From IMG/VR virus record IMGVR_UViG_3300024999_000030, positions 268,731 to 332,730 of that record: DNA of 64,000 nucleotides; one strand, given 5' to 3'. How positions within the stretch are numbered: the first letter of the stretch is position 1; every line of letters starts with the position of its first letter. The notes under the pieces are model-generated. The model saw only the letters and a list, made by a program, of their open reading frames with translations, did not search any database and had not been told where the DNA came from. Shown here in pieces: positions 3,099-24,610 of the stretch. The position numbers and the translations under genes are program-made.

Positions 3099-4352
3099 AT
3101 GCCTACTTATGTTGTTGACACTTCCGTCCTACTTGAAGATCAATCTGTACTTAATGACATGCAAGATTCAGAGCTTATTATCCCATTAGCTGTACTTCAG
3201 GAGTTAGATAATCATAAATGTGATTTAGGATTAGTTGGATATAACGCTCGAACTTTCGTTAAACAACTTGAAAAACTAAGACAAAATGCTTGCTTGACGG
3301 ATGGTGTATCATTCGGTTCTTCATGTTCTTTAAAAGTGGACGTTACAGAGTTTCCCAATGCCACAGCCGATCAAAAAATTATAGCCCTATGTGAGTCCCT
3401 AAAAAAAGAAGCCAAAGATAAAATATTCTTATTGTCTGAAGATATATCTTTGAGGTTAATTGCTGAAGCAAAAGGAATATCTGCTAAATCTGGAATGTAT
3501 ATGCAAGATGAAAGTTTATATAAAGGTGTTAGAGAAATTAGTCTTGAAAAGAATGAAATAGATTCTTTCTTCAAAACAAAACGGGCGCCTATTGATTTTG
3601 CATACCCTAATGAATATTTTATTATGAGGGGAAATGGAAATGGTGGTGCTGTTGGAAAATATAAACAGAAGTCTGGATGCATAGTTCCACTGGGAGATGT
3701 TGATATTGTAAATGATTTTGTGCGTGCTAGAAATGCAAACCAAAGGTTTCTTGTTGATGCTATTCTCGATCCGGATATTTCGATAGTAATGGCGGCATCT
3801 AAAGCTGGTTGTGGAAAAACTATTCTATCTCTTGGGGCAGCTTTATATCTCACTAGACACGCTAAAAGTTATCAACAGGTTGTAATTACCAAGGCCGTGA
3901 CTCCCGTTGGAGGAAAAGATTCCATTGGTTTTCTTCCAGGTTCTTTCGACGAGAAAATGCGTTTCTGGACTTTAAATTTTACTGATAATTTATCGGTGGT
4001 TTCTGATGAAAAGGGTGGTTATGGTTCAGATATTTTTACCTCAGATGACATTGAAGTTTGTTCTTTAATGCATATGAGGGGAAGGTCACTTCATCATGCG
4101 ATTATTATTGTAGATGAATTTCAAAACCTCACTCCAAAAGAAGCAAAGACAATTATCACGAGAGTGGGTGAGGGATCAAAAATTATTTGCTTAGGAGATA
4201 TAACTCAAATTGACGTATCGTATTTAAATGAATATAATAATGGCTTAACTTATATTACTAATAAATTTAAAGAACATGATATTGCAGCTAGCGTATATCT
4301 AGATAAAAATGAAAGATCTCGTCTGTCTAATTTAGCCGCAGAGATTCTGTAA
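3099..4352 (+). CDS. phoH: PIN domain-PhoH family ATPase (PhoH2/YlaK type)
   Basis: N-terminal PIN (YVVDTSVLL, ELDNHK, ADQKII, SEDISLR) and PhoH motifs KAGCGKT, GFLPGS, MRGRSL, DEFQN, GDITQID. Confidence 0.92.
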   Translation: MPTYVVDTSVLLEDQSVLNDMQDSELIIPLAVLQELDNHKCDLGLVGYNARTFVKQLEKLRQNACLTDGVSFGSSCSLKVDVTEFPNATADQKIIALCESLKKEAKDKIFLLSEDISLRLIAEAKGISAKSGMYMQDESLYKGVREISLEKNEIDSFFKTKRAPIDFAYPNEYFIMRGNGNGGAVGKYKQKSGCIVPLGDVDIVNDFVRARNANQRFLVDAILDPDISIVMAASKAGCGKTILSLGAALYLTRHAKSYQQVVITKAVTPVGGKDSIGFLPGSFDEKMRFWTLNFTDNLSVVSDEKGGYGSDIFTSDDIEVCSLMHMRGRSLHHAIIIVDEFQNLTPKEAKTIITRVGEGSKIICLGDITQIDVSYLNEYNNGLTYITNKFKEHDIAASVYLDKNERSRLSNLAAEIL

Positions 4353-4374
4353 AATAAATTACTTAGTTAAGTTG

Positions 4375-4404
4375 CTACTGCATGGTTATTTTATCATGCA
4401 GTAG
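4375..4404 (+). terminator. Stem-loop after phoH (terminator-like or processing hairpin)
   Basis: CTACTGCATG (4375-4384) / CATGCAGTAG (4395-4404) is a perfect 10-bp inverted repeat. The following U-tract is weak. Confidence 0.5.
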
Positions 4405-4425
4405 TGTCTTAATTTGGAGGCACAT

Positions 4426-4815
4426 ATGATAAGTACTGAAGACAGTGTAAGAACATTTTTGGAATGTATTTCTATACAGCCCACTGGAGATGTGGAACAA
4501 GACGCTAAGATTAAAGAAATACTTAAGAAAAGCATTTATGATTTATGTTTTGTTATGGTTCCCGATGTAGATTCTTTAGTTGATGATCGGGGTGTGTTTA
4601 AACCAAGCTCTCCAGAACATGCCGCTGTAATGAAAGCCTTTCTAGGAGAGCAACGTAAAGTTATTTTTTCTGTATTTAGTGGAATAGCTAAACTCAAAGA
4701 AGAAGATGAAAACACAAAATCTGAGCTAAAGGCTGAAATTAAAGAACTTAAATTAGATATGAATAAAATTATGACTAGACTTAAAGGTATTATGAAAAAT
4801 CAACTCACTTCTTAA
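4426..4815 (+). CDS. Hypothetical protein with coiled-coil C-terminus
   Basis: GGAGG RBS places the start at ATG 4426 rather than TTG 4414. Confidence 0.75.
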   Translation: MISTEDSVRTFLECISIQPTGDVEQDAKIKEILKKSIYDLCFVMVPDVDSLVDDRGVFKPSSPEHAAVMKAFLGEQRKVIFSVFSGIAKLKEEDENTKSELKAEIKELKLDMNKIMTRLKGIMKNQLTS

Positions 4816-4840
4816 TTTTTTTAATTGGCATGGAAGTTGC

Positions 4841-5130
4841 TACGCGCGTGCGCGCGTATTATTTAGTATTATTATATTATTATAATAATAAAACAATACG
4901 CCTCAATTGAGGACCACTATTGAGGGGCTCATATGAGGACATCATATGAGGTAAACATATTGAGGCAAACATAATGCGGCGAATATATTGAGACAAATAA
5001 TTAAATTATTAAATTATTCGTCTCATTTATGGTCTCATTATTCTATTGTCTTTGCTAAATAAGGGAGTATTATAGTTATATGTATTATATAATAATTTCT
5101 TTAAATAATTTCTTTATAAGAATGTTTTAA
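4841..5130. repeat. Non-coding iteron-like array with GC palindrome and AT-rich flanks (candidate replication origin)
   Basis: TGAGG-core units at 4908, 4921, 4934, 4947, 4961, 4975 (TGCGG) and 4989 (TGAGA), with 13-14 bp period. Inverted TCTCA at 5021 and 5033. TACGCGCG-TG-CGCGCGTA palindrome at 4841-4858. This is the largest intergenic gap in the window. Confidence 0.65.
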
Positions 5131-5186
5131 AGACATTACGGGAATCTTAAAAGTGTATTTGAAATACAGAGTAAGTTGGAGGAAAT

Positions 5187-5516
5187 ATGATAGTGCTAGC
5201 AATTCTTCTTGGGGCAATAGCAACTGAAGCTACTGTAAAAGTTCTTTTACGTGGATCTATATTTGAATCTCCTAGAAATTGGATTTATTCAAAAATATCT
5301 GATCAAAAATTTATTGGCAAATTAATTCGTTGTCCTTATTGCTTATCGTTTTGGGTATCAATGTTGATACTTATATCAGCATTACATTTACCTAGTTGGT
5401 TCTTGGTTTATGTTTCATGGATGTCTATATGTAGACTTAGCAATATAATTCATGACATCTCTGATAAGATTTATTATACGCAATATGGAACTGGAATCTC
5501 CCAGGATTCAAAATAA
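5187..5516 (+). CDS. Small membrane protein, DUF1360-like
   Basis: Hydrophobic segments and a LIRCPYCLSFWVS motif. GGAGG RBS. Confidence 0.6.
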   Translation: MIVLAILLGAIATEATVKVLLRGSIFESPRNWIYSKISDQKFIGKLIRCPYCLSFWVSMLILISALHLPSWFLVYVSWMSICRLSNIIHDISDKIYYTQYGTGISQDSK

Positions 5517-5530
5517 GAAAGAAGGCTGAC

Positions 5531-5812
5531 ATGCAACAAACTGAAATCAATATAACATTTCCTGTAATTATTGGAGCCCAAGACTATCATGAGTTTATGG
5601 ATTATAGAGATGTTTTAAAAGATATTACTGGTGAACCTATTAAATACATTGAAATACAATCGGAACTTTATGAAATAGAAAACTTTACAGGAAACAAAAC
5701 AGATAAAGATAAACTTATATTTGAACTTACAAATAAATTATCTGGATTAGTAGATATCAAAAAACTTCTTAAAAGAAACCATACTCCATATTGTGCTGTG
5801 TTTTATATTTAA
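5531..5812 (+). CDS. Hypothetical protein
   Basis: 93-aa ORF in a co-oriented run with an AAGG RBS. Confidence 0.65.
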   Translation: MQQTEINITFPVIIGAQDYHEFMDYRDVLKDITGEPIKYIEIQSELYEIENFTGNKTDKDKLIFELTNKLSGLVDIKKLLKRNHTPYCAVFYI

Positions 5813-5824
5813 CACTATTCTTGA

Positions 5825-5853
5825 TTGACTTTTTAATTTATGTATATTATATT
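5825..5853 (+). promoter_or_regulatory. Sigma-70-type promoter TTGACT-N17-TATATT
   Basis: TTGACT 5825-5830, TATATT 5848-5853. One of five exact copies. Confidence 0.85.
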
Positions 5854-5881
5854 TTATAAGCAATAAAAAGAAAGGACTAAA

Positions 5882-7309
5882 ATGATAAGTGAAAGCAAAT
5901 TAAAGTTTTGGATTGAAAACAATCAAAACGTTTTGTTCGTTGGTAAGCACGGAGTGGGTAAGACCGCTAGAGTTTTAAATGCCTTTGAGGAATCAAAACT
6001 TAAATGGTTATATTTTAGTGCTTCCACTCTAGATCCATGGGTGGATTTTATTGGCATTCCAAAAGAAGTAAAAGATGCAAATGGCAATAGTTACATAGAC
6101 TTAGTCCGTCCAAAGGCTTTTGCTGAAGACGATGTAGAGGCTATTTTCTTGGACGAATATAACAGAAGTCCTAAAAAAGTTAGAAATGCAGTAATGGAAC
6201 TCATACAATTCAAATCTATTAACGGTAAGAAATTTAAAAACCTTAGAATTATTTGGGCTGCTATTAACCCAGACGAAGAAGGAGATGGAGAAGAAGGTTA
6301 TGATGTGGAAAAACTCGATCCTGCTCAAAGAGATAGGTTTCATGTAATCGTGGATGTTCCATATAAACCAGATCGTGGATATTTTGTGTCTAAATATGGA
6401 AAGGAAATTTCAGAAGATGCTATTGGGTGGTGGACTGATTTAGATAAAGTTTCTCAAAATAGTGTGTCTCCTAGACGATTAGACTATGCATTAGATTTGT
6501 ATGTTAAAAAAGGAGATCTTAGAGACGTCTTACCAAGCAATGTTAACGTAACTAAACTCATACAAGAACTAGGAGGAAGAAGTACAAAGAAGGCTATAGC
6601 TGATTTATATTCCTCTCAAGACGTAGATAAGTCAAAAATCTTTTTATCGTCTAGAAATAATGTGGATGCTATTACTAAACTATTGAATATAAATGAGGGT
6701 TATAGAAAATTCTTTTTGCCTTTAATTGGAGAAGAAGATCTTGCTAGACTTATGTCAACTAGCAATATCATTTATGAAAACGTTATTCAAGATAGTAAGT
6801 ATGAAAGTATTATACAGGAAATTAAGAAAACAAAATCTTCATTAGCTAAAAGACTAATGAAAGATGTGCCACAAAAAATTAAAGGATATACTTTTTCTTC
6901 TGTGTCTTTAGATAATCCACCTAATGCAAAGCGTTCAAAAAAGTTTACTATAAAAACAGGGGTAGCTATAAGTTACGTTTTATCTAGCAAACGTAGTTCA
7001 TTATATGGAACGTACGATAGAGTATGTGCTATTAATTATATAATTCATAATATAAAATCAACAGATGATATTAAAACTTTTAAAGAATCAATTGAAATTA
7101 TGAAAACATTATTCGAGAGATCTAATTTTACTACAATAAATAAAATAACTCACATAGATCATATTTTTGGTTTTGTTATTAAAAAATTAAGTTTACTGAA
7201 TGGTAGAGATGCAGGTAAAGAACTTTCAATCTTTAATGCTAGCCTATCGGCTATTGGCAAAAATAAATTAAACTTATTCTTAGTAAGTAGGGGCATTATG
7301 TATGTTTAA
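5882..7309 (+). CDS. MoxR-like AAA+ ATPase
   Basis: Walker A GKHGVGKT, Walker B IFLDEYNR, AVMELIQ, sensor AAINP, LDPAQRDRF, SPRRL. Confidence 0.88.
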   Translation: MISESKLKFWIENNQNVLFVGKHGVGKTARVLNAFEESKLKWLYFSASTLDPWVDFIGIPKEVKDANGNSYIDLVRPKAFAEDDVEAIFLDEYNRSPKKVRNAVMELIQFKSINGKKFKNLRIIWAAINPDEEGDGEEGYDVEKLDPAQRDRFHVIVDVPYKPDRGYFVSKYGKEISEDAIGWWTDLDKVSQNSVSPRRLDYALDLYVKKGDLRDVLPSNVNVTKLIQELGGRSTKKAIADLYSSQDVDKSKIFLSSRNNVDAITKLLNINEGYRKFFLPLIGEEDLARLMSTSNIIYENVIQDSKYESIIQEIKKTKSSLAKRLMKDVPQKIKGYTFSSVSLDNPPNAKRSKKFTIKTGVAISYVLSSKRSSLYGTYDRVCAINYIIHNIKSTDDIKTFKESIEIMKTLFERSNFTTINKITHIDHIFGFVIKKLSLLNGRDAGKELSIFNASLSAIGKNKLNLFLVSRGIMYV

Positions 7310-8618
7310 TACAAAAGATGAAATCAGTTTATCTAACGAAGAATTTTCTACTATAGCTAGAGGATTAGATTCTCATCACGCTGTATTTTCTACTTTGTGG
7401 AATTTAGGGAAACCAACATTCACAAACTTAACAGATACAGCAATGGTGTCTTTTGAAGACAACAATGAAAACCGTGTTAACTTTTATTTTAATCCTTCCT
7501 TTTGGAATGAGCTAACAGAATATGAAAGGAATTTTGTAATATGTCATGAATGTCTCCATGTTATTCTTGGGCATGGAGCAAGATTAAAATCTTTATTGAA
7601 TGGTAAATCTAATGCTAGTATAGCTGCGAATGCTAATATAGCTGCGGATATAGTAGTTAATCATATGCTTACTGGGTCTATGGGATTTGATAGAACTAAG
7701 TTAGTTAAACTAAATAAGAATGGATGTTGGGTCGATATAGTTTTTAAAGAAACAGATAAGATTGAAAAGGATAGGTGTCTAGAATATTATTATAACCTTC
7801 TAAATAAATTAGATGAACAAAGTGAAAAAACAACCATAGACGATCATTCTAATCTTAGTGGAACCAATATAGACGGATCAAATAATAATCTTATTGAAGA
7901 TTTAGTAGACGATGTCATCAGGGATTTAAGCCAGGATGATATGAAGTCATTCTCTGATATGGTAGGCCAAAATAAAGAAGAGTCTAATTCTCAACAGCGC
8001 GGAACTATTGCTGGTAATATTACTCAAGTTATAAAACTTACAAAAGTAATTACCAAAAAGAAATGGGAAACAGTTATTAATAAATGGGCACAAAAACAAA
8101 TTAAAGATTCTAATAAAGACCACGAACAATGGGCTAGAACCAACAGAAGATTTAATGAGATATCTTTACTTTCAAATCTATTTCTTCCATCCGAAATGGA
8201 AGTGGATGAGAGGGAACAAGAAGAAACTAAGATAAAAGTTGTATTCTTTCAGGACACCTCTGGATCTTGCCGGGGGTTTGCTAAGAGATTTTTTACTGCA
8301 GCCGCCAGTCTTCCTAAAGATAAATTTGATATAGATCTTTATTGTTTCGATACTCAAGTATATAAAACATCTTTGGAAAGCGGTAAACTTTATGGTTTTG
8401 GCGGAACGTCTTTTTCGATATTAGAAAGTTATGTTTGGAATAATATAGCTCAGCGCGATGAAAAGAAATATCCCAAAGCTATTTTTGTAATTACAGATGG
8501 ATATGGAGATAATATTAATCCGAGAATACCTAAGAAATGGTATTGGTTTTTGTCTTCGTCTTATAGAAGTTGTATATCAAATAAGTGTAATATTTTCAAA
8601 TTATCTGATTTTGAATGA
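7302..8618 (+). CDS. Metallopeptidase-vWA protein (DUF2201-type), partner of the AAA ATPase
   Basis: HExxH motif CHECLHVILGH with ANIAADIVVN, C-terminal MIDAS DTSGS, GGTSF, ITDGY. Confidence 0.85.
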   Translation: MFNTKDEISLSNEEFSTIARGLDSHHAVFSTLWNLGKPTFTNLTDTAMVSFEDNNENRVNFYFNPSFWNELTEYERNFVICHECLHVILGHGARLKSLLNGKSNASIAANANIAADIVVNHMLTGSMGFDRTKLVKLNKNGCWVDIVFKETDKIEKDRCLEYYYNLLNKLDEQSEKTTIDDHSNLSGTNIDGSNNNLIEDLVDDVIRDLSQDDMKSFSDMVGQNKEESNSQQRGTIAGNITQVIKLTKVITKKKWETVINKWAQKQIKDSNKDHEQWARTNRRFNEISLLSNLFLPSEMEVDEREQEETKIKVVFFQDTSGSCRGFAKRFFTAAASLPKDKFDIDLYCFDTQVYKTSLESGKLYGFGGTSFSILESYVWNNIAQRDEKKYPKAIFVITDGYGDNINPRIPKKWYWFLSSSYRSCISNKCNIFKLSDFE

Positions 8619-8669: not shown

Positions 8670-8891
8670 ATGGCTAAAGTGTATGTAAGAGATGGTGAGC
8701 CGATTGATAGAGCGTTAAAGCGTTTTACTAATGCAGTATCTAAAGATGGGATTCTTCGTGAGCTTAAGATGAGGGAATATTTTCTCACTGCAACTCAAAA
8801 GAAGAGAATTAAAAAAGAAGAAGCTAGAAAACGTTTCATGAAAAATCTTAAAAAGAAGTTTTCTAAGGAAGACTCACTAAGTAAACGCTAA
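8670..8891 (+). CDS. rpsU: 30S ribosomal protein S21 (phage-encoded)
   Basis: MAKVYVRDGEPIDRALKRF...GILRELKMREYF...KKRIKKEEARKR matches the bS21 pattern. 73 aa, basic. Confidence 0.92.
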   Translation: MAKVYVRDGEPIDRALKRFTNAVSKDGILRELKMREYFLTATQKKRIKKEEARKRFMKNLKKKFSKEDSLSKR

Positions 8892-9064
8892 TGGTTGATA
8901 ATCATATTGACGAAGTCAAACTTAAATTTGCTAATATAAGACAGGCTATCAAAAACTTACCAATCGATGAAGAAGTTAAGGAACAGCTAAATAAAATTTT
9001 ATTTTCTCAGCTAAGGACAATCATAGCATATGTCGGATCAACCGAAGAAAAGCAAACTAGATAA
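8891..9064 (+). CDS. Small hypothetical protein (57 aa, below the ORF-track cutoff)
   Basis: TAATG overlap with the rpsU stop. MVDNHIDEVKLKFANIRQAIKNLPIDEEVKEQLNKILFSQLRTIIAYVGSTEEKQTR fills the gap. Confidence 0.6.
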   Translation: MVDNHIDEVKLKFANIRQAIKNLPIDEEVKEQLNKILFSQLRTIIAYVGSTEEKQTR

Positions 9065-9695
9065 AAAATTAGTAGACGAAATAAAAAAAGAAACAGATAT
9101 CCTCAAGCTTGTAGAAGACTTGGGGCTTAGTGTTATTAAGTCTGCGGGTGATCGATGGATTACCCATTGTTTATTTCATGACGAACGGACTCCCAGTATG
9201 ACCCTATACAGGGAGTCAAATAGTTTTTATTGTTATGGGTGCACAGAAAGTGGTGATGTAATATCTTTACTGCAAAAAGCAAAGAACCTCTCATTTATGA
9301 ATGCTGTTAAATTTTTAGCCGAGAGAGGCGGCATAGATTTAGAATTCTCTAAAAAAGCCACGTTCAATTGGGACGGATACGGCGAATACTCTGAAGAGCC
9401 CGGTACCGCGCTCGACTACGAAGACATGTTTACTTTTGTTGCCATAGAAACTCGCAAGCTCATACAGCAAATCAAACAGACTTTCACAGAAGAATCTGTG
9501 GAGTTTAGCGAGGCTATGTCTTCGATGGAGAGTATTTACCAGAAGTTTGACAACGCCGATATGATTGGTGTAAAGACGATGGCACTCTCTCAGCTTGAAG
9601 ACTTAGCAAACGAGCTAAGGGAGATATTAAATGAAAGTGGGAGTAATCGGGGACATTCACCTCGGGGCATCGTATCACTTCGGACACACTCTTAA
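9030..9695 (+). CDS. Stand-alone CHC2 zinc-finger protein (DnaG primase zinc-binding domain plus acidic helical tail)
   Basis: CLFHDERTPSM...FYCYGC...GDVISLLQ...LSFMNAVKFLA. No TOPRIM domain follows. Confidence 0.85.
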   Translation: MSDQPKKSKLDKKLVDEIKKETDILKLVEDLGLSVIKSAGDRWITHCLFHDERTPSMTLYRESNSFYCYGCTESGDVISLLQKAKNLSFMNAVKFLAERGGIDLEFSKKATFNWDGYGEYSEEPGTALDYEDMFTFVAIETRKLIQQIKQTFTEESVEFSEAMSSMESIYQKFDNADMIGVKTMALSQLEDLANELREILNESGSNRGHSPRGIVSLRTHS

Positions 9696-14441: not shown

Positions 14442-17371
14442 TGAGACTCTACAAGTATTCCGATGATAACAAAAATGTTAATGAAGAAACTAAAGATGGT
14501 CTAGAAGAATCAAAACCTCAATCTTCATCAACAATCCCAGAGATAGAGCCTGGGGAAAATGATGAAATGATTGGGATACTTGTAGAGAGTTTTGCCGATA
14601 CTCTTATATCTTCTTTATGGTCAGATGATTTTCCAATTCCACTATCGGAATTGACGCATCACATAGGACAATTAGGAGAAAATAATTTTATAAGGTCCAT
14701 GGAAAATATTAGGACCTTTTTAAGTAAAATTGGGGCTTTTAAATATGAGGTGCCAATCAACAACAAGGAAGATGCCCTCCAATATATACAATCGTTTTCC
14801 CCTCAGATTAAAGATTTAGGTAAGTCACATGCGATGGCACTGTTACAATTACTTGGTATTAGCGGAAGTAGACCAGAGGAAATCTCATTAGAAACCCCTA
14901 TTGGTAGCCCATCAGCTAAAGGCGAAGAAGGTCGTCCAACTCTAGGTGGGACACTTACAGATAAAAATACACCTCTTAGTGAGTTATTAGATAAAGAAAC
15001 CTATGTAGATAATTTATCTAGGATAAAAGATGTTTATGAAGAAATAGAAAATTTAGATCAGTTGTCACCAGAGGAAGCAGATACAAAACGCGGTCAATTA
15101 CTTACACAATTAAAATCAATTGAAAAATCTTTTTCAGCTTTTGATGTGCCAGAACAAGTAGAAAAAAAAGTAGAACAGCTGTCTATTAAATTACAATCGT
15201 CAAACGCTTTTCAAAGTAGAGTAGAAGAACTTAAGGATAAATATGGTTTAGTGGATATGAAAGATCCTAAAATTTTAGCGTATGCTGCTCAGTTAGATAG
15301 GATGCCACCGATTAAACCAGGTGAGTTTAAAGAGGGGTTTCCAGTTGTTGACTTGTCTACTATTCCAGATATAGCTAAGACTGGCGCCAGCGACATAGCA
15401 AAGTTTTTATTGATAGCTAGATTATCAGAGTCTAAAGTCTTCTTAACGAGAAATCAAAATTCTGGTAGTCCGGTTGGTGGAGGAATGGCCACAAAGTGGC
15501 CCACTACTATATCTGGAACAGATACATTTATGGACCATAGATTTTCATCTAAGAAAGCATTCGTGAATTATTCTGGAAATATTAGCTCATTAAGTTCAGA
15601 AGAGTTTAGTAAAATATTAGATAAATATTTAGGGGGGGCAGAGAAAGCCGGTTCGGGTAGACAAACTTCTTATACATGGCCCATGGTGTTTAGTCAGGCC
15701 TTAGGGTCCTTTATAGGTATGCCCGAAGAAGCTATGTTAAACCTTGGTGCAGAATTAGCAGACGCAATAGAGACTGAAGATAAATCTCAAATTAAAGCTG
15801 TGTTATCAAAATATAAATATAATTCATATGGAGTATTAACAGATACTTCTCATGACTCTTTATCTAAAAATAATTATACTTTTAGTTCTATTTGTACTCC
15901 AACTCAAATGGTAAAGTCTTTAGCGGAAGCTAAGGGAACTAATGCTGAAACAATCCATGAAGAAATGAAAGGTCTTTTACCGAATAGTAAAACGCTTCAG
16001 GGGGCTATAGGACAACCAGTATTTGATAATAGAATGCCAATCATTCCAATGCCCCCAGAGGCACTAGTGGCCATTGCTTTCTATGTTGTGAGGTTATTTA
16101 TAGCCACATGTAGAGCTAATGTAATATCAACAATAGAAGAATATAATTCTAATGAAAAAGTTCAATCAGATATAGAATCTGTTATTAATAATTTAATGGA
16201 TAATTTAAATTCATCTTTAGATTCATCTGGCGATTTTCGTTTATCTGGTGTGACTAAAGCATTTACGAGACCTATTATACAAACCACTAAGCTTCAAAAT
16301 TTTGGGGTATCGGTGGATAAACTTAAATCATTAGCAATGGAAGGTATTAAATTATCATTGCAAAGTGGAGCATTATTATCTTCATCGGAAGCCTCATTCG
16401 ATTTTAAAAAACAGTCGTCATTTAATAGAGAGGCAATTTATAATATTGCCACTACTTTATCTAAAGCCACATTAGATAGTATCCAAGTTGGGGATAAAAC
16501 CATCCCGACCAATATGACTAGTGTAACTTCTGGAACTCGTCTTACGGATTTTAGTTCCAGAAGATTATTAGATGTAGAAAAAGCCGAACAGCATGGTAGA
16601 TATTCATTATCTCAGCCCGAGCAAATTAAAGCAAGCACATCTGAAACTGTTCGTAGATCTATGGGTAGAATGTCAAGTCTTGTTGATAATTGTAATCTAG
16701 TATCTATCATTGGAGTGGAACAAAGCGAAGATGCCACTGTATTTGCCATTCGGTCTAACTCTAGTCCCGTAATACAAAATGGCGGTAAGGGAGCAAAGAT
16801 TACTATCTATACAAATACGGATGGAAAAAGAGAAGAGGTATTATCTTCCACAACTGATAGAATTTCAGTTAAACCATCAATTGGGGACGATAGTGGTAGG
16901 CTGGCATACAAGTTGTTTATATCACCAGCAGTTGATTTTTCTATGGAAGACTTTGATTATGAGCTTAGTATAGGTCAAGAAATTATGTATCAAGCTAGAT
17001 TAGCCACTGAGAAAAACACTCTTGATGTTTGGATTAGAGAAGTTAACAAAGAATTATTTAAGTTTAATGAAATGAAGTCTGAAATGATTCAAGCTATTTC
17101 TTCTAATAATTTATCAAGGGCTATGGAAGTTATGAGAATTAATGAGCTATCTTTAAGGGTGGACCTAAATAGATTTAAAACACTTAATTCAGATTACAAA
17201 TCTATTGTAGATTCTGTAATGAATAAAATTAAAGATAAAGAAGACGTAGATGCATATTCTATTTTTATAAAAGATTATGTATTTAAATGTATAGTGGCTA
17301 TTAATCAAATCAGAACTCAAATTGTTGATTTTAAAAAACAAGCAGCTATTATTCTTGGGGTGGGTAAATGA
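14441..17371 (+). CDS. Large hypothetical protein (976 aa), candidate virion/internal protein
   Basis: Long ORF coupled at both ends (TAATG, ATGA), with an acidic N-terminus after MRLYKYS. No domain recognised. Confidence 0.8.
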   Translation: MRLYKYSDDNKNVNEETKDGLEESKPQSSSTIPEIEPGENDEMIGILVESFADTLISSLWSDDFPIPLSELTHHIGQLGENNFIRSMENIRTFLSKIGAFKYEVPINNKEDALQYIQSFSPQIKDLGKSHAMALLQLLGISGSRPEEISLETPIGSPSAKGEEGRPTLGGTLTDKNTPLSELLDKETYVDNLSRIKDVYEEIENLDQLSPEEADTKRGQLLTQLKSIEKSFSAFDVPEQVEKKVEQLSIKLQSSNAFQSRVEELKDKYGLVDMKDPKILAYAAQLDRMPPIKPGEFKEGFPVVDLSTIPDIAKTGASDIAKFLLIARLSESKVFLTRNQNSGSPVGGGMATKWPTTISGTDTFMDHRFSSKKAFVNYSGNISSLSSEEFSKILDKYLGGAEKAGSGRQTSYTWPMVFSQALGSFIGMPEEAMLNLGAELADAIETEDKSQIKAVLSKYKYNSYGVLTDTSHDSLSKNNYTFSSICTPTQMVKSLAEAKGTNAETIHEEMKGLLPNSKTLQGAIGQPVFDNRMPIIPMPPEALVAIAFYVVRLFIATCRANVISTIEEYNSNEKVQSDIESVINNLMDNLNSSLDSSGDFRLSGVTKAFTRPIIQTTKLQNFGVSVDKLKSLAMEGIKLSLQSGALLSSSEASFDFKKQSSFNREAIYNIATTLSKATLDSIQVGDKTIPTNMTSVTSGTRLTDFSSRRLLDVEKAEQHGRYSLSQPEQIKASTSETVRRSMGRMSSLVDNCNLVSIIGVEQSEDATVFAIRSNSSPVIQNGGKGAKITIYTNTDGKREEVLSSTTDRISVKPSIGDDSGRLAYKLFISPAVDFSMEDFDYELSIGQEIMYQARLATEKNTLDVWIREVNKELFKFNEMKSEMIQAISSNNLSRAMEVMRINELSLRVDLNRFKTLNSDYKSIVDSVMNKIKDKEDVDAYSIFIKDYVFKCIVAINQIRTQIVDFKKQAAIILGVGK

Positions 17372-18060
17372 AAGAGTTTGCATATGTAGTTTCCAGACTC
17401 AAAACAGCCGCTCAACAAACCGGTGAAACTTGCTATATAGTTGGTGGAGCCGTGAGAGATATAATATCTCTTAAGAAGATTAAGGATGTTGATACGGTGG
17501 TGGCAATAAATCCTGAAAAATTTGCCTCAGCATTAGCCTCTACAACGGAGGGAGCAACCGCAGAAGAGGTTCATGCTCCATTTCCATTGTGGTCAGTGGA
17601 TATTAGCGACGTGTCTGTAGATGTAGTTGGGTTAAGAGGAAAGAGTCTTCAAGAAGATATTCAACATAGAAATTTTACTATCAATACAATATACTATGAC
17701 GTAGTAAGAGATAGGTTTGAAGATCCAACTGGAAAAGGGTTTACTGATCTTTATAATGGAGTAATTAATACTGTTACTCCAGATTCTTTTGTTTTTTTTA
17801 GTTCTAGTCCACATGAAATTAATAGCATATTTATAGCAATAAGATTAGTAGCGGATTCCGGATTTAAATTAAGTGAACAATTAAAAAGCGGAATTAGGAA
17901 AGCCTTAGAGCATGGCCTCATTCCCGCTGAGTTATCTAAGAGATCTAAAAAGGAAATACTAAGAACTAGGCTTTCACATAATTTTAAGACCAAAGCTCTC
18001 CCCATAATTGAAGAGCTTGGTTTGGAGCATTTTTATGAAGCTGCCGCTGTTTCTCCATAA
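17368..18060 (+). CDS. Short class II tRNA nucleotidyltransferase/poly(A) polymerase-family head domain (divergent)
   Basis: YIVGGAVRD...DVD, EDIQHRNFTIN (canonical RRDFTIN), DPTGKGFTDL. Lacks the flexible loop and a clear EDxxR. Confidence 0.8.
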   Translation: MKEFAYVVSRLKTAAQQTGETCYIVGGAVRDIISLKKIKDVDTVVAINPEKFASALASTTEGATAEEVHAPFPLWSVDISDVSVDVVGLRGKSLQEDIQHRNFTINTIYYDVVRDRFEDPTGKGFTDLYNGVINTVTPDSFVFFSSSPHEINSIFIAIRLVADSGFKLSEQLKSGIRKALEHGLIPAELSKRSKKEILRTRLSHNFKTKALPIIEELGLEHFYEAAAVSP

Positions 18061-21000
18061 AACCGCCCAGGCGGGATTAAATCAAGCTGTATTTAATATG
18101 GTAGCAGCCGCCACTGATGCAGGATTTAATGCACCAATCTATTTAGCTGGTGGTGCCGCTAGAGATATCATTCTTGGAAAGTCTCCTAATGACCTAGATG
18201 TTATGATAGAAAAAGAAAATGGAGCTGAAGAATTTGGAAAAATTTATTTAAACTATTGTGAAAAAAATAACATTAAAGTTTCTACTCCAGGTAAAGCTGT
18301 GGGTGCTAATTTTGGTGTATATAAATTTAGGCACGATGGTTTAGAATTAGATTTTGCTACTTCGCGTACCGATACTTATACTGAAGATTCTAGGAAGCCT
18401 ACAGTTGAATCTGCAAGCCTTAATGAAGATGCGGAGAGAAGAGACTTCAGTATTAATGCTATGTATGTTTGTATATACGGCACTCCCTCTGTTCAACCAG
18501 ATGACAAGGTTGATATTGGAGGAAGAGAGTTTGGAGTTTATGACCCAACTCATAAAGGAATTAAAGATTTAAAAAATGGAGTTATTAGTTTTGTAAATGA
18601 TGATCATGATTTTACTTTAAGCGAGGACCCCATTAGGGCTCTTAGGGCAGTAAAATTTTCTGGTAGAAAGTTTGGAGAAAAAACTTTTACAATTGAACCA
18701 GAGACATCTAAAAGTATTAAAGATTTTTTAAATTCAGAAAAAGGTAAAGAGCTATATCTTAAAAAGGTTAAACCGGAGAGGCCCTGGAAAGAATTAAAAG
18801 ATATTCTAACTGCTCAGAATTTAAAAGAAGCTATGAAACAGTTTAAGGAAACTGGAGTCAGGGACTTTATTTTTGATTTACCAAAAGAAGAATTTAATAG
18901 TTGGGACATGGATCAACTTAACAAACATCATAATCTTAATTTATATGATCACACAATCTTTGCTATGGAAAATCTTGGAGAAGGACTTCATACTATGGGG
19001 GAAAATGGCCTTCCCATTTCCAAAGACACTGAAGCCACTATACAACTAGCAATGTTATTACATGATGTGGGAAAAAGACATAAAGAATTTAAACCTAGAG
19101 AAGATGGAACAGTTAAATATTTAAAGCATGAAAATAAATCTACAGATGTTTTAAAAAAATATGTTTGGCCGAAGCTGGCACAGTTACCACCAAAAACTCA
19201 AGAGATTGTTAATTACTTTGTGAAGAGTCATATGGATTTTCATAAGTATCCCAAGAAGGATGAGGGAGATATTAGATTTTTAAAGCAGATGATTTATAAT
19301 CTATTGCCTAAAACTTTTGGTGGTTCTCTTGGAGCAGATAAAGAAAAACAGATGGAGATAATGTCTTATGTTGTGAGTTTCTTTGGTAGCGCAGATTCTT
19401 CTGCAAAACAATTAGAGGATGAAGAAAAAAATAAACTAACAAAAGACTACGAAGACTTTGGTAATAGACTTAGATTGTCTAAACCAAGGAACCTTTTGTT
19501 TAATGTTGCTGCTCCAATCATCAAAGAAATATTGACTAATCATGGAGTTCAAATTTATAATAGTGCAATCGGATCTATATATGAATACTTAAATGTTTAT
19601 ATTATTAACGTTTCAGAAGAACCAAAAGATATAATTCAATTTGTATCTAAGCAGACAGAACAAATTCTAACCAATGTAAAAAATTTTGTTAAAGAATTTA
19701 TAAATGAGCATGAAGGAACAAATGAACAAGAGGCGCTTGATAAATATCTTGCCAATGCTCATAAGTTTTCTGGATCAATTAAACATAGGTTTAAAAAAGA
19801 TGCAATCTTTGAAGTGTTGTCGGATTTATATAAAGATAAAAAAATAAATGGAGATGTAAAAATGCCTAAGCTCGTTATTGCTAAATATAAATCTAAAAAG
19901 AAACTCGATACCGGTACAGTTGTATATGAGTATGGAGAAGCCGATAAAAAGAAACGAGCTAAAAAAAAGGCACGTCAAGTGAGAAAGGTGTTTCAAAATA
20001 TTAATAAAATTAAAAAATCTTTTGAAAAAGATCTAAAGTCCGATGATAAAAAAATACAAATGACGGCTTTAGCTGTGGGAATTATTTATCATATTTATGA
20101 GCGGGTAGGCGATAGAGCTAATGTAGGAACAGGCGTTACTTCATTTAGAAAGAAACATATTACAGTAAAAGGAAATAAAGTACAGTTTAAATATGTGGGA
20201 AAATCACATATGAAACAAGATAAAACATTAACAGATTCAACTATAGCCAAAATCATTAAGGAGAATTTAGAAGGTAAAAGTAGTAATGCATATCTGTTTG
20301 ACTATACAGATGAAAATGGTAAAAAATTTGATGTATATTCCAGTGACATTAATGAATATCTTAAATCTTTTAACATTACCGCTAAAGATTTAAGGGCCCA
20401 CGCAGCTAATGATATTTTAATTGCTAAACTTAAATCAGCTGGAAAAGCTAAAGGTGAATCTCCAGAAGAAAAAGAAAAATGGCGTAAAGAAAAACTCAAA
20501 GAATTAATTGAAGAAACAGCTGATGAAATTGGTCATACTCCCGGCATTTGCAAATCATCATATATAGACCCATCTCTTATGGATGAATATATAGCCAGTG
20601 GTAAAATTATTAAATTAGCTGCTGATTTTGATTTGACAGTAATAATTAAACTTGCGGATATTTCTGTTAATCCAAAGATTAAAGAGTTAATGGATAGAGA
20701 ATTCACACCAGAAGAACAATCAATCATTTCAAATCCACATGATGTAAGATCTACAATTAATGATGAAGTGTTCTTACAGGCCTTAAGTAAAGCTAAACAA
20801 CAAGGAACTTTATCTGGTTTATTAGAAATAGTAGAAGATAATGACCCTTCTGCTTTTGGAGTTACCCCGGTTATAGTTGGTGGTAAAGCTATTCCCATTA
20901 TTGGGCTCAATGTTAATAAAATTAAAGAAGAGGCAGCCCAGAAAGGTAAATCGATTGAAGAGGTGTTGTCAGAACAGGTTAAACAATTTTTAGGAGTCAT

Positions 21001-21565
21001 GGCCCATGAGAAAGAACATGTCGAAGGCAAAGGTGAACCTGAAGCTGAAAGAGTACAAAAAGATGAAGTGTCTAAACAAACTTCTCAAGAAGGGTCATCA
21101 TCTAAGCTAACAATGGGCTCTCTTAAGTTGGCATCTACAGATAAATCTCTTTTTCAAAAACTTGGTATTAGAGATATTAGTAATGATACCTTATTAAAAG
21201 TATCCAATAATGTTTTAAAAATTCTTGGAATCCCAAATACCAATCTTAATATAGGACTATTGTCTCTTGGGTATCTTGTTATGCTTGGTAATCACCCCTA
21301 TAGGTCAGAATGGAATATTAGACAAGCTACGGGTTTATCTGAACCAATTAATATTAAGGAAGCACAGACCCTATATAATATTTTAGATAACGCAATAGAT
21401 GAGAAACCTATTGAAGAAGATAAGGCAAAAGAATATTATTCTTTTTCCGATGAAGATAAAATGAATCTAGGTGAACTACAATCACTTAAGTGGGAATCTG
21501 AACCATCCTATGCGGCTGGAACAGGTATGGGATTTTATCCTCAAACACATCCTTTTAATTACTAA
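18035..21565 (+). CDS. Multidomain protein: CCA-adding tRNA nucleotidyltransferase + HD domain + type IB topoisomerase + HExxH segment
   Basis: LAGGAARD...DLD, DFATSRTDTY...SRKP, EDAERRDFSINA, EDPIRALRAVKF; HD domain DHT...LLHDVGK...HE; Topo IB motifs ERVG, VGKS, AKDLR, GHTPGICKSSYIDP; AHEKEH. A GGAG RBS favours the start at 18035. Confidence 0.9.
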   Translation: MKLPLFLHKTAQAGLNQAVFNMVAAATDAGFNAPIYLAGGAARDIILGKSPNDLDVMIEKENGAEEFGKIYLNYCEKNNIKVSTPGKAVGANFGVYKFRHDGLELDFATSRTDTYTEDSRKPTVESASLNEDAERRDFSINAMYVCIYGTPSVQPDDKVDIGGREFGVYDPTHKGIKDLKNGVISFVNDDHDFTLSEDPIRALRAVKFSGRKFGEKTFTIEPETSKSIKDFLNSEKGKELYLKKVKPERPWKELKDILTAQNLKEAMKQFKETGVRDFIFDLPKEEFNSWDMDQLNKHHNLNLYDHTIFAMENLGEGLHTMGENGLPISKDTEATIQLAMLLHDVGKRHKEFKPREDGTVKYLKHENKSTDVLKKYVWPKLAQLPPKTQEIVNYFVKSHMDFHKYPKKDEGDIRFLKQMIYNLLPKTFGGSLGADKEKQMEIMSYVVSFFGSADSSAKQLEDEEKNKLTKDYEDFGNRLRLSKPRNLLFNVAAPIIKEILTNHGVQIYNSAIGSIYEYLNVYIINVSEEPKDIIQFVSKQTEQILTNVKNFVKEFINEHEGTNEQEALDKYLANAHKFSGSIKHRFKKDAIFEVLSDLYKDKKINGDVKMPKLVIAKYKSKKKLDTGTVVYEYGEADKKKRAKKKARQVRKVFQNINKIKKSFEKDLKSDDKKIQMTALAVGIIYHIYERVGDRANVGTGVTSFRKKHITVKGNKVQFKYVGKSHMKQDKTLTDSTIAKIIKENLEGKSSNAYLFDYTDENGKKFDVYSSDINEYLKSFNITAKDLRAHAANDILIAKLKSAGKAKGESPEEKEKWRKEKLKELIEETADEIGHTPGICKSSYIDPSLMDEYIASGKIIKLAADFDLTVIIKLADISVNPKIKELMDREFTPEEQSIISNPHDVRSTINDEVFLQALSKAKQQGTLSGLLEIVEDNDPSAFGVTPVIVGGKAIPIIGLNVNKIKEEAAQKGKSIEEVLSEQVKQFLGVMAHEKEHVEGKGEPEAERVQKDEVSKQTSQEGSSSKLTMGSLKLASTDKSLFQKLGIRDISNDTLLKVSNNVLKILGIPNTNLNIGLLSLGYLVMLGNHPYRSEWNIRQATGLSEPINIKEAQTLYNILDNAIDEKPIEEDKAKEYYSFSDEDKMNLGELQSLKWESEPSYAAGTGMGFYPQTHPFNY

Positions 21566-23710: not shown

Positions 23711-24610
23711 ATGTTTGCAAACTTACATACTCATACCGATTATTCTGTATTAGATGGAATGATGACGGTAGATAAGGCTTTTGAAAAAGCCAAGCAGAAT
23801 GGATACTCCGCTCTAGCAATTACAGAACACGCAAATATGGCGTCTTTATTTGTTGCTTTAAAGGCGGCTGAAAAATATGATGTAAAATTTATTCCTGGTA
23901 TAGAATTTAATTTTGCAGATGACACGGGCGACGAGAAGGAATATCATCTCGTCGCTTTAGCTTCAACCCACAATGGACTTAAGTCTATTATGAAAGTTTC
24001 CTATGGGGCTTATTTTAAAGACTATAAGAATCCATATATCACATGGCAAGATCTAGATGAACTAGATAAAGATGGGGTATATCTTTTATCTGGATGTGAG
24101 GCAGGACTATTAGCAAGAAAAGCTTTATTTTTTGGCTCTTCTCGCGGAGGCCAAGTGTTAGATAGATTTTCATCTATGTTTGGTGATAGGTTCTTTGTTG
24201 AATTAAATGCCCCTTACAATGATAGGCAAAAAGATATCAATAGTATTTTATTAGATTTATCTAAACAAAAAAGTGTTCCAGCAATTATGACATTAGATAG
24301 TCATTATGCTAATGAAGCTGATGCGGAATTATTTCCAGTTTTTCAAGCAGTTCAATCTAAACGCACTATCTTTGATAAAGATAAATTTTACGATAGAAGT
24401 TCTTTAATCTCTGAGTCAGCGTTAAGAAATATGTGCGAGTCAGAATTTTCTTCCTCTATAGATAACGCCGCCGTATTAGCTTCTAGATGTCAGGACCCTA
24501 GGGAATATTTAAAAATTAGTGGCTCCTTTCTTATGCCAAAATTTGATGTGAGTTCAACGGACGACTATGAAGGATTTAAGAAGTGGAGGAAGGAAAACTA
24601 TGGAGTATAA
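23711..24610 (+). CDS. dnaE: DNA polymerase III alpha, N-terminal PHP domain (separate gene)
   Basis: FANLHTHTDYSVLDG, ALAITEH, FIPGIE, YHLVALA, LLSGC, DSHY, ending at the LMPKF linker. Confidence 0.9.
   Translation: MFANLHTHTDYSVLDGMMTVDKAFEKAKQNGYSALAITEHANMASLFVALKAAEKYDVKFIPGIEFNFADDTGDEKEYHLVALASTHNGLKSIMKVSYGAYFKDYKNPYITWQDLDELDKDGVYLLSGCEAGLLARKALFFGSSRGGQVLDRFSSMFGDRFFVELNAPYNDRQKDINSILLDLSKQKSVPAIMTLDSHYANEADAELFPVFQAVQSKRTIFDKDKFYDRSSLISESALRNMCESEFSSSIDNAAVLASRCQDPREYLKISGSFLMPKFDVSSTDDYEGFKKWRKENYGV

What the first reader, a model, noticed from the sequence alone, without database searches (positions are those of the whole stretch)
4901..5130. Phased iteron-like array: candidate replication origin
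Seen: seven TGAGG-core units spaced 13, 13, 13, 14, 14, 14 bp (4908-4993). Several are self-palindromic (CCTCAATTGAGG 4901-4912, CTCATATGAG 4928-4937). Two inverted copies lie at 5021 and 5033, and very AT-rich tracts flank the array. Established: plasmid and phage origins use short iterons beside an AT-rich unwinding element. Inference: origin or nucleoprotein-assembly site. The 13-14 bp period rotates successive sites around the helix rather than keeping them on one face, which is unusual. No initiator gene is identifiable beside it.
Basis: partly seen in the sequence, partly recalled or inferred. Interest (0 to 1): 0.62.

Follow-up and report, generated by a model that had tools for sequence, protein, structure and literature searches.

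The report
Candidate replication origin of huge phage
A 333-kb uncultured groundwater phage carries one conserved non-coding stretch in which a phased array of short protein-binding-type repeats sits between the two most easily melted DNA segments of its genome; this most likely marks where DNA replication starts, though nothing here shows that directly.

Summary
Seven TGAGG-type cores lie at 4908-4993, spaced 13,13,13,14,14,14 bp. No other phased chain in the 332.7-kb genome exceeds 3 cores. The array is the genome's only non-coding tandem repeat locus. It lies in a 371-bp spacer (4816-5186) at the head of a replication and recombination gene block. It is bracketed by the two least stable 30-bp duplex windows of the genome.

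Three related phage lineages keep a repeat array at the same place. Two keep the same core and the same 13-then-14 spacing, with 7 or 9 units. A third has four 37-bp repeats, each with an 18-bp palindrome that shares CAATTGAG. The spacer is at least as conserved as the flanking genes.

Upstream lies a conserved sigma54-type -24/-12 motif, unique in the genome, and an alternating CG tract. Downstream lie two inverted copies, a sigma70-like promoter and two AT-rich 13-mers.

Best reading: an iteron-type origin, possibly primed by transcription (confidence 0.45). No initiator was found. GC skew cannot map an origin here because nearly all genes share one strand. Only assembled contigs were available, so coverage and transcription were untestable. 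Rivals: operator or enhancer array for the downstream operon, centromere-like site, pac site, RNA.

The parts
4426..4815 (+). Upstream gene gpA: 129 aa, acidic (pI 5.5), no known family. Its stop codon lies 10 nt before the sigma54-like motif.
   Evidence: Homologues exist only in this phage clade.
4826..4841 (+). Sigma54-type -24/-12 promoter-like element TGGCATGGAAGTTGCT (GG at 4827-4828, GC at 4839-4840). The predicted start is about 4852, reading rightwards into the array.
   Evidence: It is the only match to TGGCA-N6-TTGC in the genome. GTTGGCA and TTGCT are invariant in 6 sequences of 4 lineages, while the bases between them and upstream vary. Activity was not shown.
4841..4859 (.). Perfectly alternating purine-pyrimidine CG/TG tract. 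It forms a 7-bp GC hairpin followed by a T-rich tail, like a terminator for gpA, and is also prone to Z-DNA or cruciform formation.
   Evidence: Terminator-like hit at 4841-4858. Unique in the genome. Kept in all relatives at 17-21 nt; L025 carries the reverse-complement centre.
4859..4899 (.). AT-rich tract 1 (95% AT over 40 bp), left flank of the array.
   Evidence: Least stable 30-bp duplex window of the whole genome at 4857. Among the top 2 AT-rich 40-bp windows.
4900..4951 (+). Array part 1: four 13-bp units with dyad symmetry (GCCTCAATTGAGG, ACCACTATTGAGG, GGCTCATATGAGG, ACATCATATGAGG).
   Evidence: The same 13,13,13 spacing occurs in L025 and 13,13 in L002.
4952..4993 (+). Array part 2: three 14-bp units (TAAACATATTGAGG, CAAACATAATGCGG, CGAATATATTGAGA). 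The family consensus is CAAACATATTGAGG.
   Evidence: There are 5-6 such units in the L002 lineage and 3 in L025.
4995..5018 (.). A 24-nt spacer of pure A/T between unit 7 and the first inverted copy. With them it forms a palindrome with 18-nt arms (4989-5006 / 5008-5025, 89% complementary).
   Evidence: (pair I4).
5020..5038 (-). Two inverted repeat copies (ATGAGAC on the minus strand), 12 bp apart, pointing towards the array.
   Evidence: L025 has the palindrome GGCTCAATTATGAGCC at the same place. Not conserved in L002.
5046..5081 (+). Sigma70-like promoter candidates: TTGTCT-16-TATTAT, or TTGCTA-18-TTATAT. The -10 block GTTATATGTATT is conserved in relatives. This would be the likely promoter of the downstream operon.
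   Evidence: 9 of 12 matches, not above shuffles. Conservation. Inference only.
5068..5117 (.). AT-rich tract 2, including two tandem 13-mers AATAATTTCTTTA (5091-5116). This is the right flank.
   Evidence: Least stable 50-bp window of the genome and second least stable 30-bp window. 13-mer repeat found. Expanded to 4-5 copies in L028.
5113..5150 (+). Highly conserved block with a hairpin at 5120-5138 (AATGTTTTAAAGACATT). Probably the leader of the downstream mRNA.
   Evidence: Near-invariant in L002 and L025. One stem position reads T.G, C-G and T-A in the three lineages. Unique in the genome.
5187..5516 (+). First downstream gene: a DUF1360 membrane protein. It is followed by a 93-aa ORF, a MoxR/NorQ-like AAA+ ATPase (5882-7309) and a VWA/DUF2201 partner (7302-8618), then the replication and recombination genes.

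Best explanation
The 371-bp spacer 4816-5186 is the phage's single iteron-type replication origin, or at least its main one. A sequence-specific DNA-binding protein, probably phage-encoded and not yet identified, would bind the dyad core CTCA-N2-TGAG and its half-site ATATTGAGG. It would do so cooperatively, on seven sites 13-14 bp apart and on two oppositely oriented sites beyond a 24-bp pure A/T spacer. At about 103 degrees of net rotation per site, the bound proteins would spiral around the DNA, making two turns over seven sites. This would put torsional strain on the flanking AT tracts (4859-4899 and 5068-5117, the latter holding two 13-mers), which are the most meltable DNA in the genome. 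The phage's DnaC-like loader and DnaB helicase could then enter, helped by its HU-like protein. Transcription from the conserved sigma54-type promoter at 4826-4841, which reads rightwards through AT tract 1 into the array, may activate or prime initiation. That would give a rightward fork running in the same direction as nearly all genes. What is shown: the anatomy, uniqueness, meltability rank, conservation and genomic position. What is inferred: protein binding, melting, promoter activity and replication start.
For: (1) The array is non-random and unique. It is a chain of 7 phased cores against a maximum of 3 elsewhere, and the genome's only non-coding tandem repeat locus. The iteron and all other conserved spacer motifs occur nowhere else in the genome.
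(2) It is bracketed by the first- and second-ranked least stable 30-bp windows of 332.7 kb. In the related record G005, the most AT-rich 40-bp window again abuts the array.
(3) Position and architecture are conserved while the repeats diverge in an iteron-like way. There are 7 units in the window and L025 and 9 in L002/L026/L027, with the same 13-then-14 spacing. In L014/L016/L028 there are four 37-bp repeats, each with the palindrome GCGCTCACAATTGAGCGC.
(4) Aligned spacer identity is 82-83%, against 69-75% (L002) or 75-82% (L025) for the flanking genes.
(5) It sits at the head of a block encoding primase parts, SbcCD, a PD-(D/E)XK nuclease, topoisomerase IB, PHP plus Pol III alpha, an HU-like protein and RecA.
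(6) Both strands fold far better than shuffled sequence (z -4.1 and -6.8). This points to DNA dyad symmetry rather than a strand-specific RNA. Rfam gives no hit.
(7) The layout matches known origins: iterons on both sides of an AT-rich centre pointing in opposite directions, as in SaPI origins (PMC9371898), and repeated 13-mers in the unwinding element, as in oriC and RK2 (PMC4980987).
(8) The sequence is identical in groundwater runs of 2014-2017.
Against: No replication data of any kind exist. No initiator is encoded beside the array. gpA is acidic with no known fold match. The AAA+ ATPase 700 bp downstream is a MoxR/NorQ-type chaperone paired with a VWA protein, not an Orc- or DnaA-like initiator. 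The DnaC-like loader and DnaB lie 153 kb away. The 288-aa ORF in the classical initiator position there gave no informative fold match. GC skew shows no step at the array. An AT-skew rise at about window 6000 has equally strong counterparts elsewhere and may reflect gene content. The 13-14 bp period is unlike the roughly 11- or 22-bp phasing of classical iterons. The array also lies at about -95 to -190 from a plausible promoter, where activator or repressor sites would sit. No DnaA gene or DnaA-box cluster was found.
Confidence: 0.45

Rival explanations
1. The array is a transcriptional control region. It would be a set of operator or activator sites (an enhancer) governing the operon that starts at 5187, through the sigma70-like promoter at 5046-5081. 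Alternatively it would act as a downstream enhancer for the sigma54-type promoter at 4826-4841. This does not exclude an origin role, because iterons often double as operators.
For: The array lies about 95-190 bp, and the inverted copies about 50-70 bp, upstream of the candidate promoter. The -24/-12 motif is conserved and unique. Sigma54 promoters need multi-site enhancers, and the L028 lineage has four 18-bp palindromes typical of dimer-binding sites. The phage encodes at least two sigma-like proteins, so it reprograms transcription. Operator specificity diverges quickly between related phages (established knowledge).
Against: Seven to nine phased direct repeats are unusual for phage operators. 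The phage has no enhancer-binding protein (no Sigma54_activat) and no sigma54 gene, and the repeats lie downstream of the sigma54-like motif. TTGAGG is not enriched in other intergenic regions, so the array is not a recurrent promoter element. This reading does not explain why the two most meltable segments of the genome flank the array, nor why no other promoter region in about 400 genes has such sites.
Confidence: 0.25
2. The array is a centromere-like or DNA-organising site. A small adaptor protein would coat the short-period repeats as a helical or ring filament, as ParR does on parC, TubR on tubC, or omega on heptads. The complex would position or segregate phage DNA, perhaps together with the phage tubulin homologue.
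For: Short periods of 11-14 bp, 7-10 copies split into blocks, and a role as promoter-proximal operator are typical of type II and III centromeres. tubC consists of direct repeats in blocks upstream of tubR, and in prophage c-st the TTGAC iterons are spaced by 6 bp (PMC6009700). The phage encodes a tubulin/FtsZ-family protein. A single unique site per genome fits a centromere.
Against: Centromeres of these systems lie immediately upstream of the adaptor and NTPase genes. Here the downstream genes encode a DUF1360 membrane protein, a 93-aa acidic protein and a MoxR-VWA pair. The tubulin gene is about 160 kb away and no array lies near it. There is no ParB and no convincing ParA. The extreme AT flanks and the 13-mers are not part of known centromeres.
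Confidence: 0.12
3. The array is a packaging recognition site (pac or cos type) where the small terminase subunit binds phased repeats.
For: P1 pac, SPP1 pac and lambda cosB consist of short repeated elements, some flanking a bendable centre (from memory, not checked here). The site is unique in the genome.
Against: The only terminase-like ORF (window 55835-57817) is 51 kb away, whereas pac sites usually lie in or next to the small-subunit gene. The contig does not end here. Contigs from several runs cross the site without breaks.
Confidence: 0.05
4. The array acts as RNA. It would be a non-coding transcript or long 5' leader from the sigma54-type promoter, whose repeated UGAGG motifs or hairpins bind a protein or ribosomes.
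For: A conserved promoter-like motif points into the array. GAGG resembles a Shine-Dalgarno core. The plus strand folds better than shuffles. The downstream hairpin at 5120-5138 tolerates a U.G pair.
Against: The minus strand folds even better (z -6.8 against -4.1), as expected for DNA palindromes. The 14-bp units have no hairpin potential yet are the best conserved. Rfam gives no hit. No RNA run holds the locus.
Confidence: 0.06

Closest known systems
Iteron origins of plasmids and lambdoid phages (RK2 oriV, P1 oriR, lambda ori)
   Same: Tandem direct repeats lie next to an AT-rich unwinding element that itself holds repeated 13-mers (PMC4980987). Repeat number and sequence vary between close relatives. 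Inverted copies lie next to a promoter.
   Different: The period is 13-14 bp rather than about 22 bp, so successive sites do not share one face of the helix. No Rep or O-type initiator gene lies next to the array. No DnaA boxes were found. AT-rich tracts lie on both sides.
SaPI (staphylococcal pathogenicity island) origins
   Same: Six to twelve very short iterons are split by a central AT-rich region, with at least two iterons on each side pointing in opposite directions (PMC9371898). Here seven direct sites, a 24-bp A/T spacer and two inverted sites give the same logic.
   Different: SaPI origins lie immediately downstream of the rep gene, whose helicase carries the iteron-binding winged helix. 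No such gene flanks this array. The array here is asymmetric (7 + 2).
Transcription-primed phage origins (T7 primary origin, T4 oriF/oriG; from memory, not checked in papers here)
   Same: A promoter-like element reads straight into an extremely AT-rich tract. A rightward fork would run in the same direction as nearly all genes.
   Different: The promoter motif is of the sigma54 (-24/-12) type, which is not known for phage origins, and it is unverified. Iterons are present in addition.
Type II/III partition centromeres (R1 parC, pBtoxis and c-st tubC)
   Same: Short-period direct repeats occur in blocks that a small protein coats as a helical or ring structure and that overlap a promoter region (PMC6009700).
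   Different: No adaptor or NTPase operon follows the array. The phage tubulin gene is 160 kb away.

Membership tests
Iteron-type replication origin | Three or more tandem direct repeats at one locus of the replicon | tested here: met
   Seven units here; 7 or 9 in two related lineages and four longer 37-bp repeats in a third. Unique in the genome.
Iteron-type replication origin | Adjacent AT-rich unwinding element, often with repeated 13-mers | tested here: met
   The flanks are the first- and second-ranked least stable 30-bp windows of 332.7 kb. Two tandem 13-mers lie at 5091-5116. Actual melting was not tested.
Iteron-type replication origin | Cognate initiator gene adjacent to the iterons or otherwise identified | tested here: not met
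   The neighbours are gpA (no family), a DUF1360 protein, a 93-aa ORF and a MoxR/NorQ-like AAA+ ATPase with a VWA partner. No DnaA. The 288-aa ORF next to the DnaC-like loader is uninformative.
Iteron-type replication origin | Repeat period near whole helical turns (about 11 or 22 bp) | tested here: not met
   The period is 13-14 bp in the window and two related lineages, and 37 bp in a third.
Iteron-type replication origin | Replication shown to start there (coverage peak, skew switch, autonomous replication) | tested here: inconclusive
   Cumulative GC skew is monotonic because 339 of 396 ORFs are on one strand. Third-position skews are noisy. Only contigs were available, so there is no depth profile.
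Sigma54 promoter with enhancer | GG at -24 and GC at -12 with TGGCA-N6-TTGC spacing | tested here: met
   TGGCATGGAAGTTGCT at 4826-4841. The blocks are invariant in 4 lineages and the motif is unique in the genome.
Sigma54 promoter with enhancer | AAA+ enhancer-binding protein, with its sites about 80-150 bp upstream | tested here: not met
   No Sigma54_activat or Sigma54_DBD match in the phage. The repeats lie downstream of the motif. The host and its proteins are unknown.
Partition centromere (parC / tubC type) | Repeat blocks immediately upstream of an adaptor and NTPase operon | tested here: not met
   The downstream genes are unrelated. Tubulin lies at genome position 111,959. No ParB and only a sub-threshold CbiA hit.
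Terminase recognition site (pac / cos) | Location in or beside the terminase genes, and DNA ends at the site | tested here: not met
   The terminase-like ORF is 51 kb away. Contigs run through the site. Read ends are not testable with contigs.
Known structured RNA (Rfam) | Match to a curated covariance model | tested here: not met
   Only chance-level hits (E 0.16-0.87, far below gathering scores) in 4000-6000.

The most novel reading that the evidence does not exclude
The spacer is a sigma54-gated, transcription-primed, unidirectional origin. The unique -24/-12 promoter would fire only when an ATP-driven activator assembles on the downstream repeat array. Its transcript, starting inside the alternating CG tract, would open or prime AT tract 1. 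Genome replication of a huge phage would then be licensed by an enhancer-dependent host sigma factor. The rapidly diverging repeats would act as lineage-specific replication specificity determinants.
Probability: 0.1. Interest if true: 0.75.

Novelty: new variant of a known kind. Interest (0 to 1): 0.45.

Why it matters
I know of no mapped origins for huge phages from metagenomes, and one full-text search found none. This clade has no cultured relative (Pol III alpha at most 32% identical to any deposited phage). A single, sharply delimited and conserved candidate origin of about 370 bp gives a concrete fragment for testing by binding, melting and replication assays. It also gives a landmark for coverage-based activity estimates in metagenomes. 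The quick turnover of repeat sequence and number between lineages with 73-82% identical neighbouring proteins suggests a specificity or incompatibility determinant. The association with a sigma54-type motif and a Z-DNA-prone tract would be unusual for a phage origin if it is functional.

Tried and rejected
- GC and AT skew, including third codon positions: uninformative, because nearly all genes are co-oriented. The step-like changes are not specific to the array.
- Reads: all 11 runs are kept as assembled contigs from groundwater or sediment, and none is RNA. One read-laying run of 5,901 letters showed only that the sequence is identical across runs.
- Second copies of the iteron: a CTCATATATGAG..ATGAGG site at genome position 126,855 lies inside a small ORF. 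Palindromes at 178,035 and 200,438 and a pair at 263,874 look like chance.
- TTGAGG as a recurrent -35 element of a phage sigma factor: not enriched in intergenic DNA.
- The other extreme AT tract, at genome position 159,280: no repeats.
- Initiator hunt. gpA and the 408-aa ORF have no PDB sequence match. The 288-aa ORF upstream of the DnaC-like loader was folded (pLDDT 83.6) but gave no meaningful fold match, and the atlas search gave leads below 0.9 only. The 475-aa AAA+ ATPase was folded and matches NorQ/CbbQ MoxR ATPases, so it is not an initiator.
- More distant relatives (MoxR ATPase 40-51% identical; DUF1360 34-39%): not syntenic and no array. The only short-period array in record G001 that my ORF call flagged as non-coding turned out to be coding (KKDVA repeats).
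- Host inference through trigger factor and RecA: nothing usable.
- DNA similarity to deposited phages and plasmids: none. A pattern scan for the L028 palindrome found only a chance hit inside a 385-aa ORF, not checked against any family, in an apparently unrelated phage contig.
- Literature on jumbo-phage iterons or sigma54 promoters in phages: nothing relevant.
- No alternative genetic code was used.

Full report
**Context**

The window is the last 64 kb of a single 332,730-bp contig. It is a phage genome of 38% GC from groundwater metagenomes. IMG/VR classes the record as linear, and CheckV rates it 100% complete. By a simple ORF call, 339 of 396 ORFs lie on the plus strand. No cultured phage is close: Pol III alpha is at most 32% identical to any deposited phage.

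**The observation**

TGAGG-type cores start at 4908, 4921, 4934, 4947, 4961, 4975 (TGCGG) and 4989 (TGAGA), spaced 13,13,13,14,14,14 bp.

- The first four units are 13-bp elements with dyad symmetry. CCTCAATTGAGG and CTCATATGAG are perfect palindromes.
- The last three are 14-bp units with the consensus CAAACATATTGAGG.
- Beyond a 24-nt pure A/T spacer lie two inverted copies, ATGAGAC on the minus strand, at 5020-5038.

This is not chance.

- It is the densest TGAGG cluster of the genome.
- A phased chain of seven cores occurs only here, against a maximum of three elsewhere on either strand.
- Tandem Repeats Finder run on the whole genome finds no other non-coding tandem array.
- The 14-mer and every other conserved motif of the spacer are unique in the genome.

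**Anatomy of the spacer (4816-5186)**

The elements run from left to right as follows.

- The stop codon of gpA, a 129-aa acidic protein of no known family.
- A sigma54-type motif, TGGCATGGAAGTTGCT, at 4826-4841. It is the only TGGCA-N6-TTGC in the genome.
- A 19-nt perfectly alternating purine-pyrimidine CG/TG tract. It scores as a terminator-like hairpin.
- AT tract 1 (4859-4899).
- The seven-unit array.
- The A/T spacer and the inverted copies. Together with unit 7 these form a palindrome with 18-nt arms.
- A sigma70-like promoter candidate at 5046-5081 (not above shuffles).
- AT tract 2, with two tandem 13-mers AATAATTTCTTTA (5091-5116).
- A highly conserved block with a hairpin (5113-5150).
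- The Shine-Dalgarno sequence and start of a DUF1360 membrane protein gene.

The two AT tracts are the first- and second-ranked least stable 30-bp duplex windows of the whole genome. They are also two of its three most AT-rich 40-bp windows. No ORF of note lies in the spacer.

**Relatives**

Protein-anchored searches found three related lineages.

| Lineage | gpA identity | Repeat units | Spacing or period | Other features |
|---|---|---|---|---|
| L025 | 82% | 7, more degenerate cores (TGAGA, TAGGC, TGAGG, TGAGC, TGAGC, TGGGC, TGCGG) | 13,13,13,14,14,14 | Palindrome GGCTCAATTATGAGCC in place of the inverted copies |
| L002/L026/L027 | 74% | 9 | 13,13,14,14,14,14,14,14 | Inverted copies not conserved |
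| L014/L016/L028 | 73-75% | Four 37-bp repeats, each with the 18-bp palindrome GCGCTCACAATTGAGCGC | 37 bp | Shares the CAATTGAG core; AT-rich 13-mer family expanded to 4-5 copies |

All lineages keep the sigma54-type blocks (GTTGGCA and TTGCT invariant, bases between them variable), the alternating CG tract (17-21 nt) and the AT tract. Aligned identity of the spacer is 82-83%. The flanking genes are 69-75% identical (L002) or 75-82% (L025). In the 70-kb related record, the most AT-rich 40-bp window again abuts the array. More distant phages that share the MoxR ATPase or a DUF1360 protein are not syntenic and have no such array. The phage sequence itself is identical in runs from several years and studies.

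**Genomic setting**

Upstream lie an FtsK-like ATPase, a 408-aa protein of unknown function, a sigma factor, a PIN-PhoH protein and gpA. Downstream lie, in order:

- the DUF1360 protein and a 93-aa ORF;
- an AAA+ ATPase and a VWA/DUF2201 protein;
- ribosomal protein S21;
- a primase zinc-ribbon ORF, SbcD and SbcC;
- a PD-(D/E)XK nuclease;
- a nucleotidyltransferase-topoisomerase IB fusion;
- trigger factor;
- PHP and Pol III alpha;
- an HU-like protein, RecA, the DnaG catalytic core and a sigma-r4 HTH protein.

The array therefore heads the replication and recombination block. A second replication cluster (helicase, DnaC-like loader, DnaB, ribonucleotide reductase, SSB-like protein) lies at 116-125 kb.

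**Tests of function**

- *Skew.* Cumulative GC skew rises monotonically and reverses only across a minus-strand gene block at 155-170 kb. Third-position skews are noisy, with several steps. The AT-skew rise near window 6000 is not specific to the array. Skew therefore cannot locate an origin in this genome. If replication were unidirectional, no skew switch would be expected at all.
- *Coverage, ends, RNA.* None could be tested. All runs are stored as contigs and none is RNA.
- *RNA structure.* Both strands fold far better than shuffles, the minus strand more so (z -6.8 against -4.1). This is the signature of DNA palindromes. Rfam finds nothing.
- *Initiator.* None lies beside the array. The AAA+ ATPase 700 bp downstream was folded and matches NorQ and CbbQ, which are MoxR chaperones that work with VWA partners, as its neighbour suggests. 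The 288-aa ORF in the classical initiator position upstream of the DnaC-like loader folds confidently but matches nothing informative.
- *Other systems.* The phage has no Sigma54_activat, Sigma54_DBD, ParB or DnaA match. It has one tubulin-family gene 160 kb away. A terminase-like ORF lies 51 kb away.

**Interpretation**

The features are those of a single-copy cis-acting nucleoprotein site under strong selection, with specificity that diverges between lineages. Several points fit an iteron-type origin best:

- direct repeats combined with oppositely oriented copies across an A/T centre;
- extreme meltability on both flanks;
- repeated AT-rich 13-mers;
- the position at the head of the replication genes.

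The layout parallels SaPI origins (short iterons on both sides of an AT-rich region, pointing in opposite directions; PMC9371898). It also parallels the 13-mer unwinding elements of oriC and RK2 (PMC4980987).

The 13-14 bp period gives about 103 degrees of net rotation per site, or two full turns over seven sites. This implies a spiral rather than a one-face assembly. Such geometry is better known from centromere-binding proteins (tubC: PMC6009700). That keeps a centromere-like role alive, but the absence of adjacent partition genes argues against it.

The conserved sigma54-type motif reads into AT tract 1 and the array. This suggests transcriptional activation or priming, and a rightward fork running the same way as nearly all genes. 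That is inference only. The same motif, together with the array's position upstream of a plausible sigma70-like promoter, supports the main rival: an operator or enhancer array for the downstream operon. The two roles are not exclusive.

I put the origin reading at 0.45, transcriptional control at 0.25, a centromere-like site at 0.12, RNA at 0.06 and a pac site at 0.05.

**Novelty**

Iteron origins are well known, so the kind is not new. Several aspects are new:

- the short non-integral period;
- the 13-then-14 bipartite array conserved across lineages;
- the pairing with a sigma54-type motif and a Z-DNA-prone tract;
- its occurrence in an uncultured huge-phage clade for which no origin is known.

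I rate it a new variant of a known kind, of moderate interest. The claim stays a candidate until coverage, binding or melting data exist.

Noticed in passing
window 4826-4841: A sigma54-type -24/-12 promoter motif (TGGCATGGAAGTTGCT), the only one in the 332.7-kb genome. Its GG and GC blocks are invariant in four lineages. The phage encodes neither sigma54 nor an enhancer-binding protein.
   Followed up: partly
window 4841-4859: A 19-nt perfectly alternating purine-pyrimidine CG/TG tract in a region of about 33% GC. It is terminator-like and prone to Z-DNA or cruciform formation. Its length varies from 17 to 21 nt in relatives, and L025 carries the reverse-complement centre.
   Followed up: partly
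window 5113-5150: A near-invariant block with a hairpin (5120-5138) in the leader of the DUF1360 operon. One stem position reads T.G, C-G and T-A in three lineages, hinting at an RNA-level element.
   Followed up: no
window 9030-9695 and 31513-32310: The DnaG-type primase appears split. The CHC2 zinc-ribbon ORF and the catalytic core plus Toprim ORF lie 22 kb apart.
   Followed up: no
window 23711-24610 and 24567-27122: Pol III alpha is encoded as two overlapping ORFs, a PHP domain protein and the polymerase body.
   Followed up: no
window 8670-8891, 22365-23648, 27174-27530: The phage encodes ribosomal protein S21, a trigger-factor homologue and an HU-like DNA-binding protein.
   Followed up: no
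window 18008-21565: An 1185-aa ORF fuses a poly(A)/CCA-type nucleotidyltransferase head to a eukaryotic-type topoisomerase IB core. A second nucleotidyltransferase ORF lies just upstream (17368-18060).
   Followed up: no
window 5882-8618: A MoxR/NorQ-like AAA+ ATPase (475 aa, with a roughly 300-aa helical C-terminal extension) is paired with a DUF2201/VWA protein. This is a chaperone-type pair placed between the candidate origin and the replication genes.
   Followed up: yes
genome 111,959-112,447 (outside the window): A tubulin/FtsZ-family gene (449-aa ORF), as in some jumbo phages. No repeat array lies near it.
   Followed up: partly
window 43867-55833: A single 3,988-aa ORF just upstream of the terminase-like ORF (55835-57817).
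   Followed up: no
window 62141-64000 and genome 1-132: The contig ends share a 68-nt repeat, offset by 32 nt, inside an ORF that runs off the end. The assembly probably broke within a repeat-containing gene of a circular or circularly permuted genome.
   Followed up: no
L025 1833-2596: In the closest relative, the sigma-factor gene upstream of PIN-PhoH is called as two ORFs (110 and 144 aa) instead of one of 272 aa. This may be a frameshift or an assembly error.
   Followed up: no
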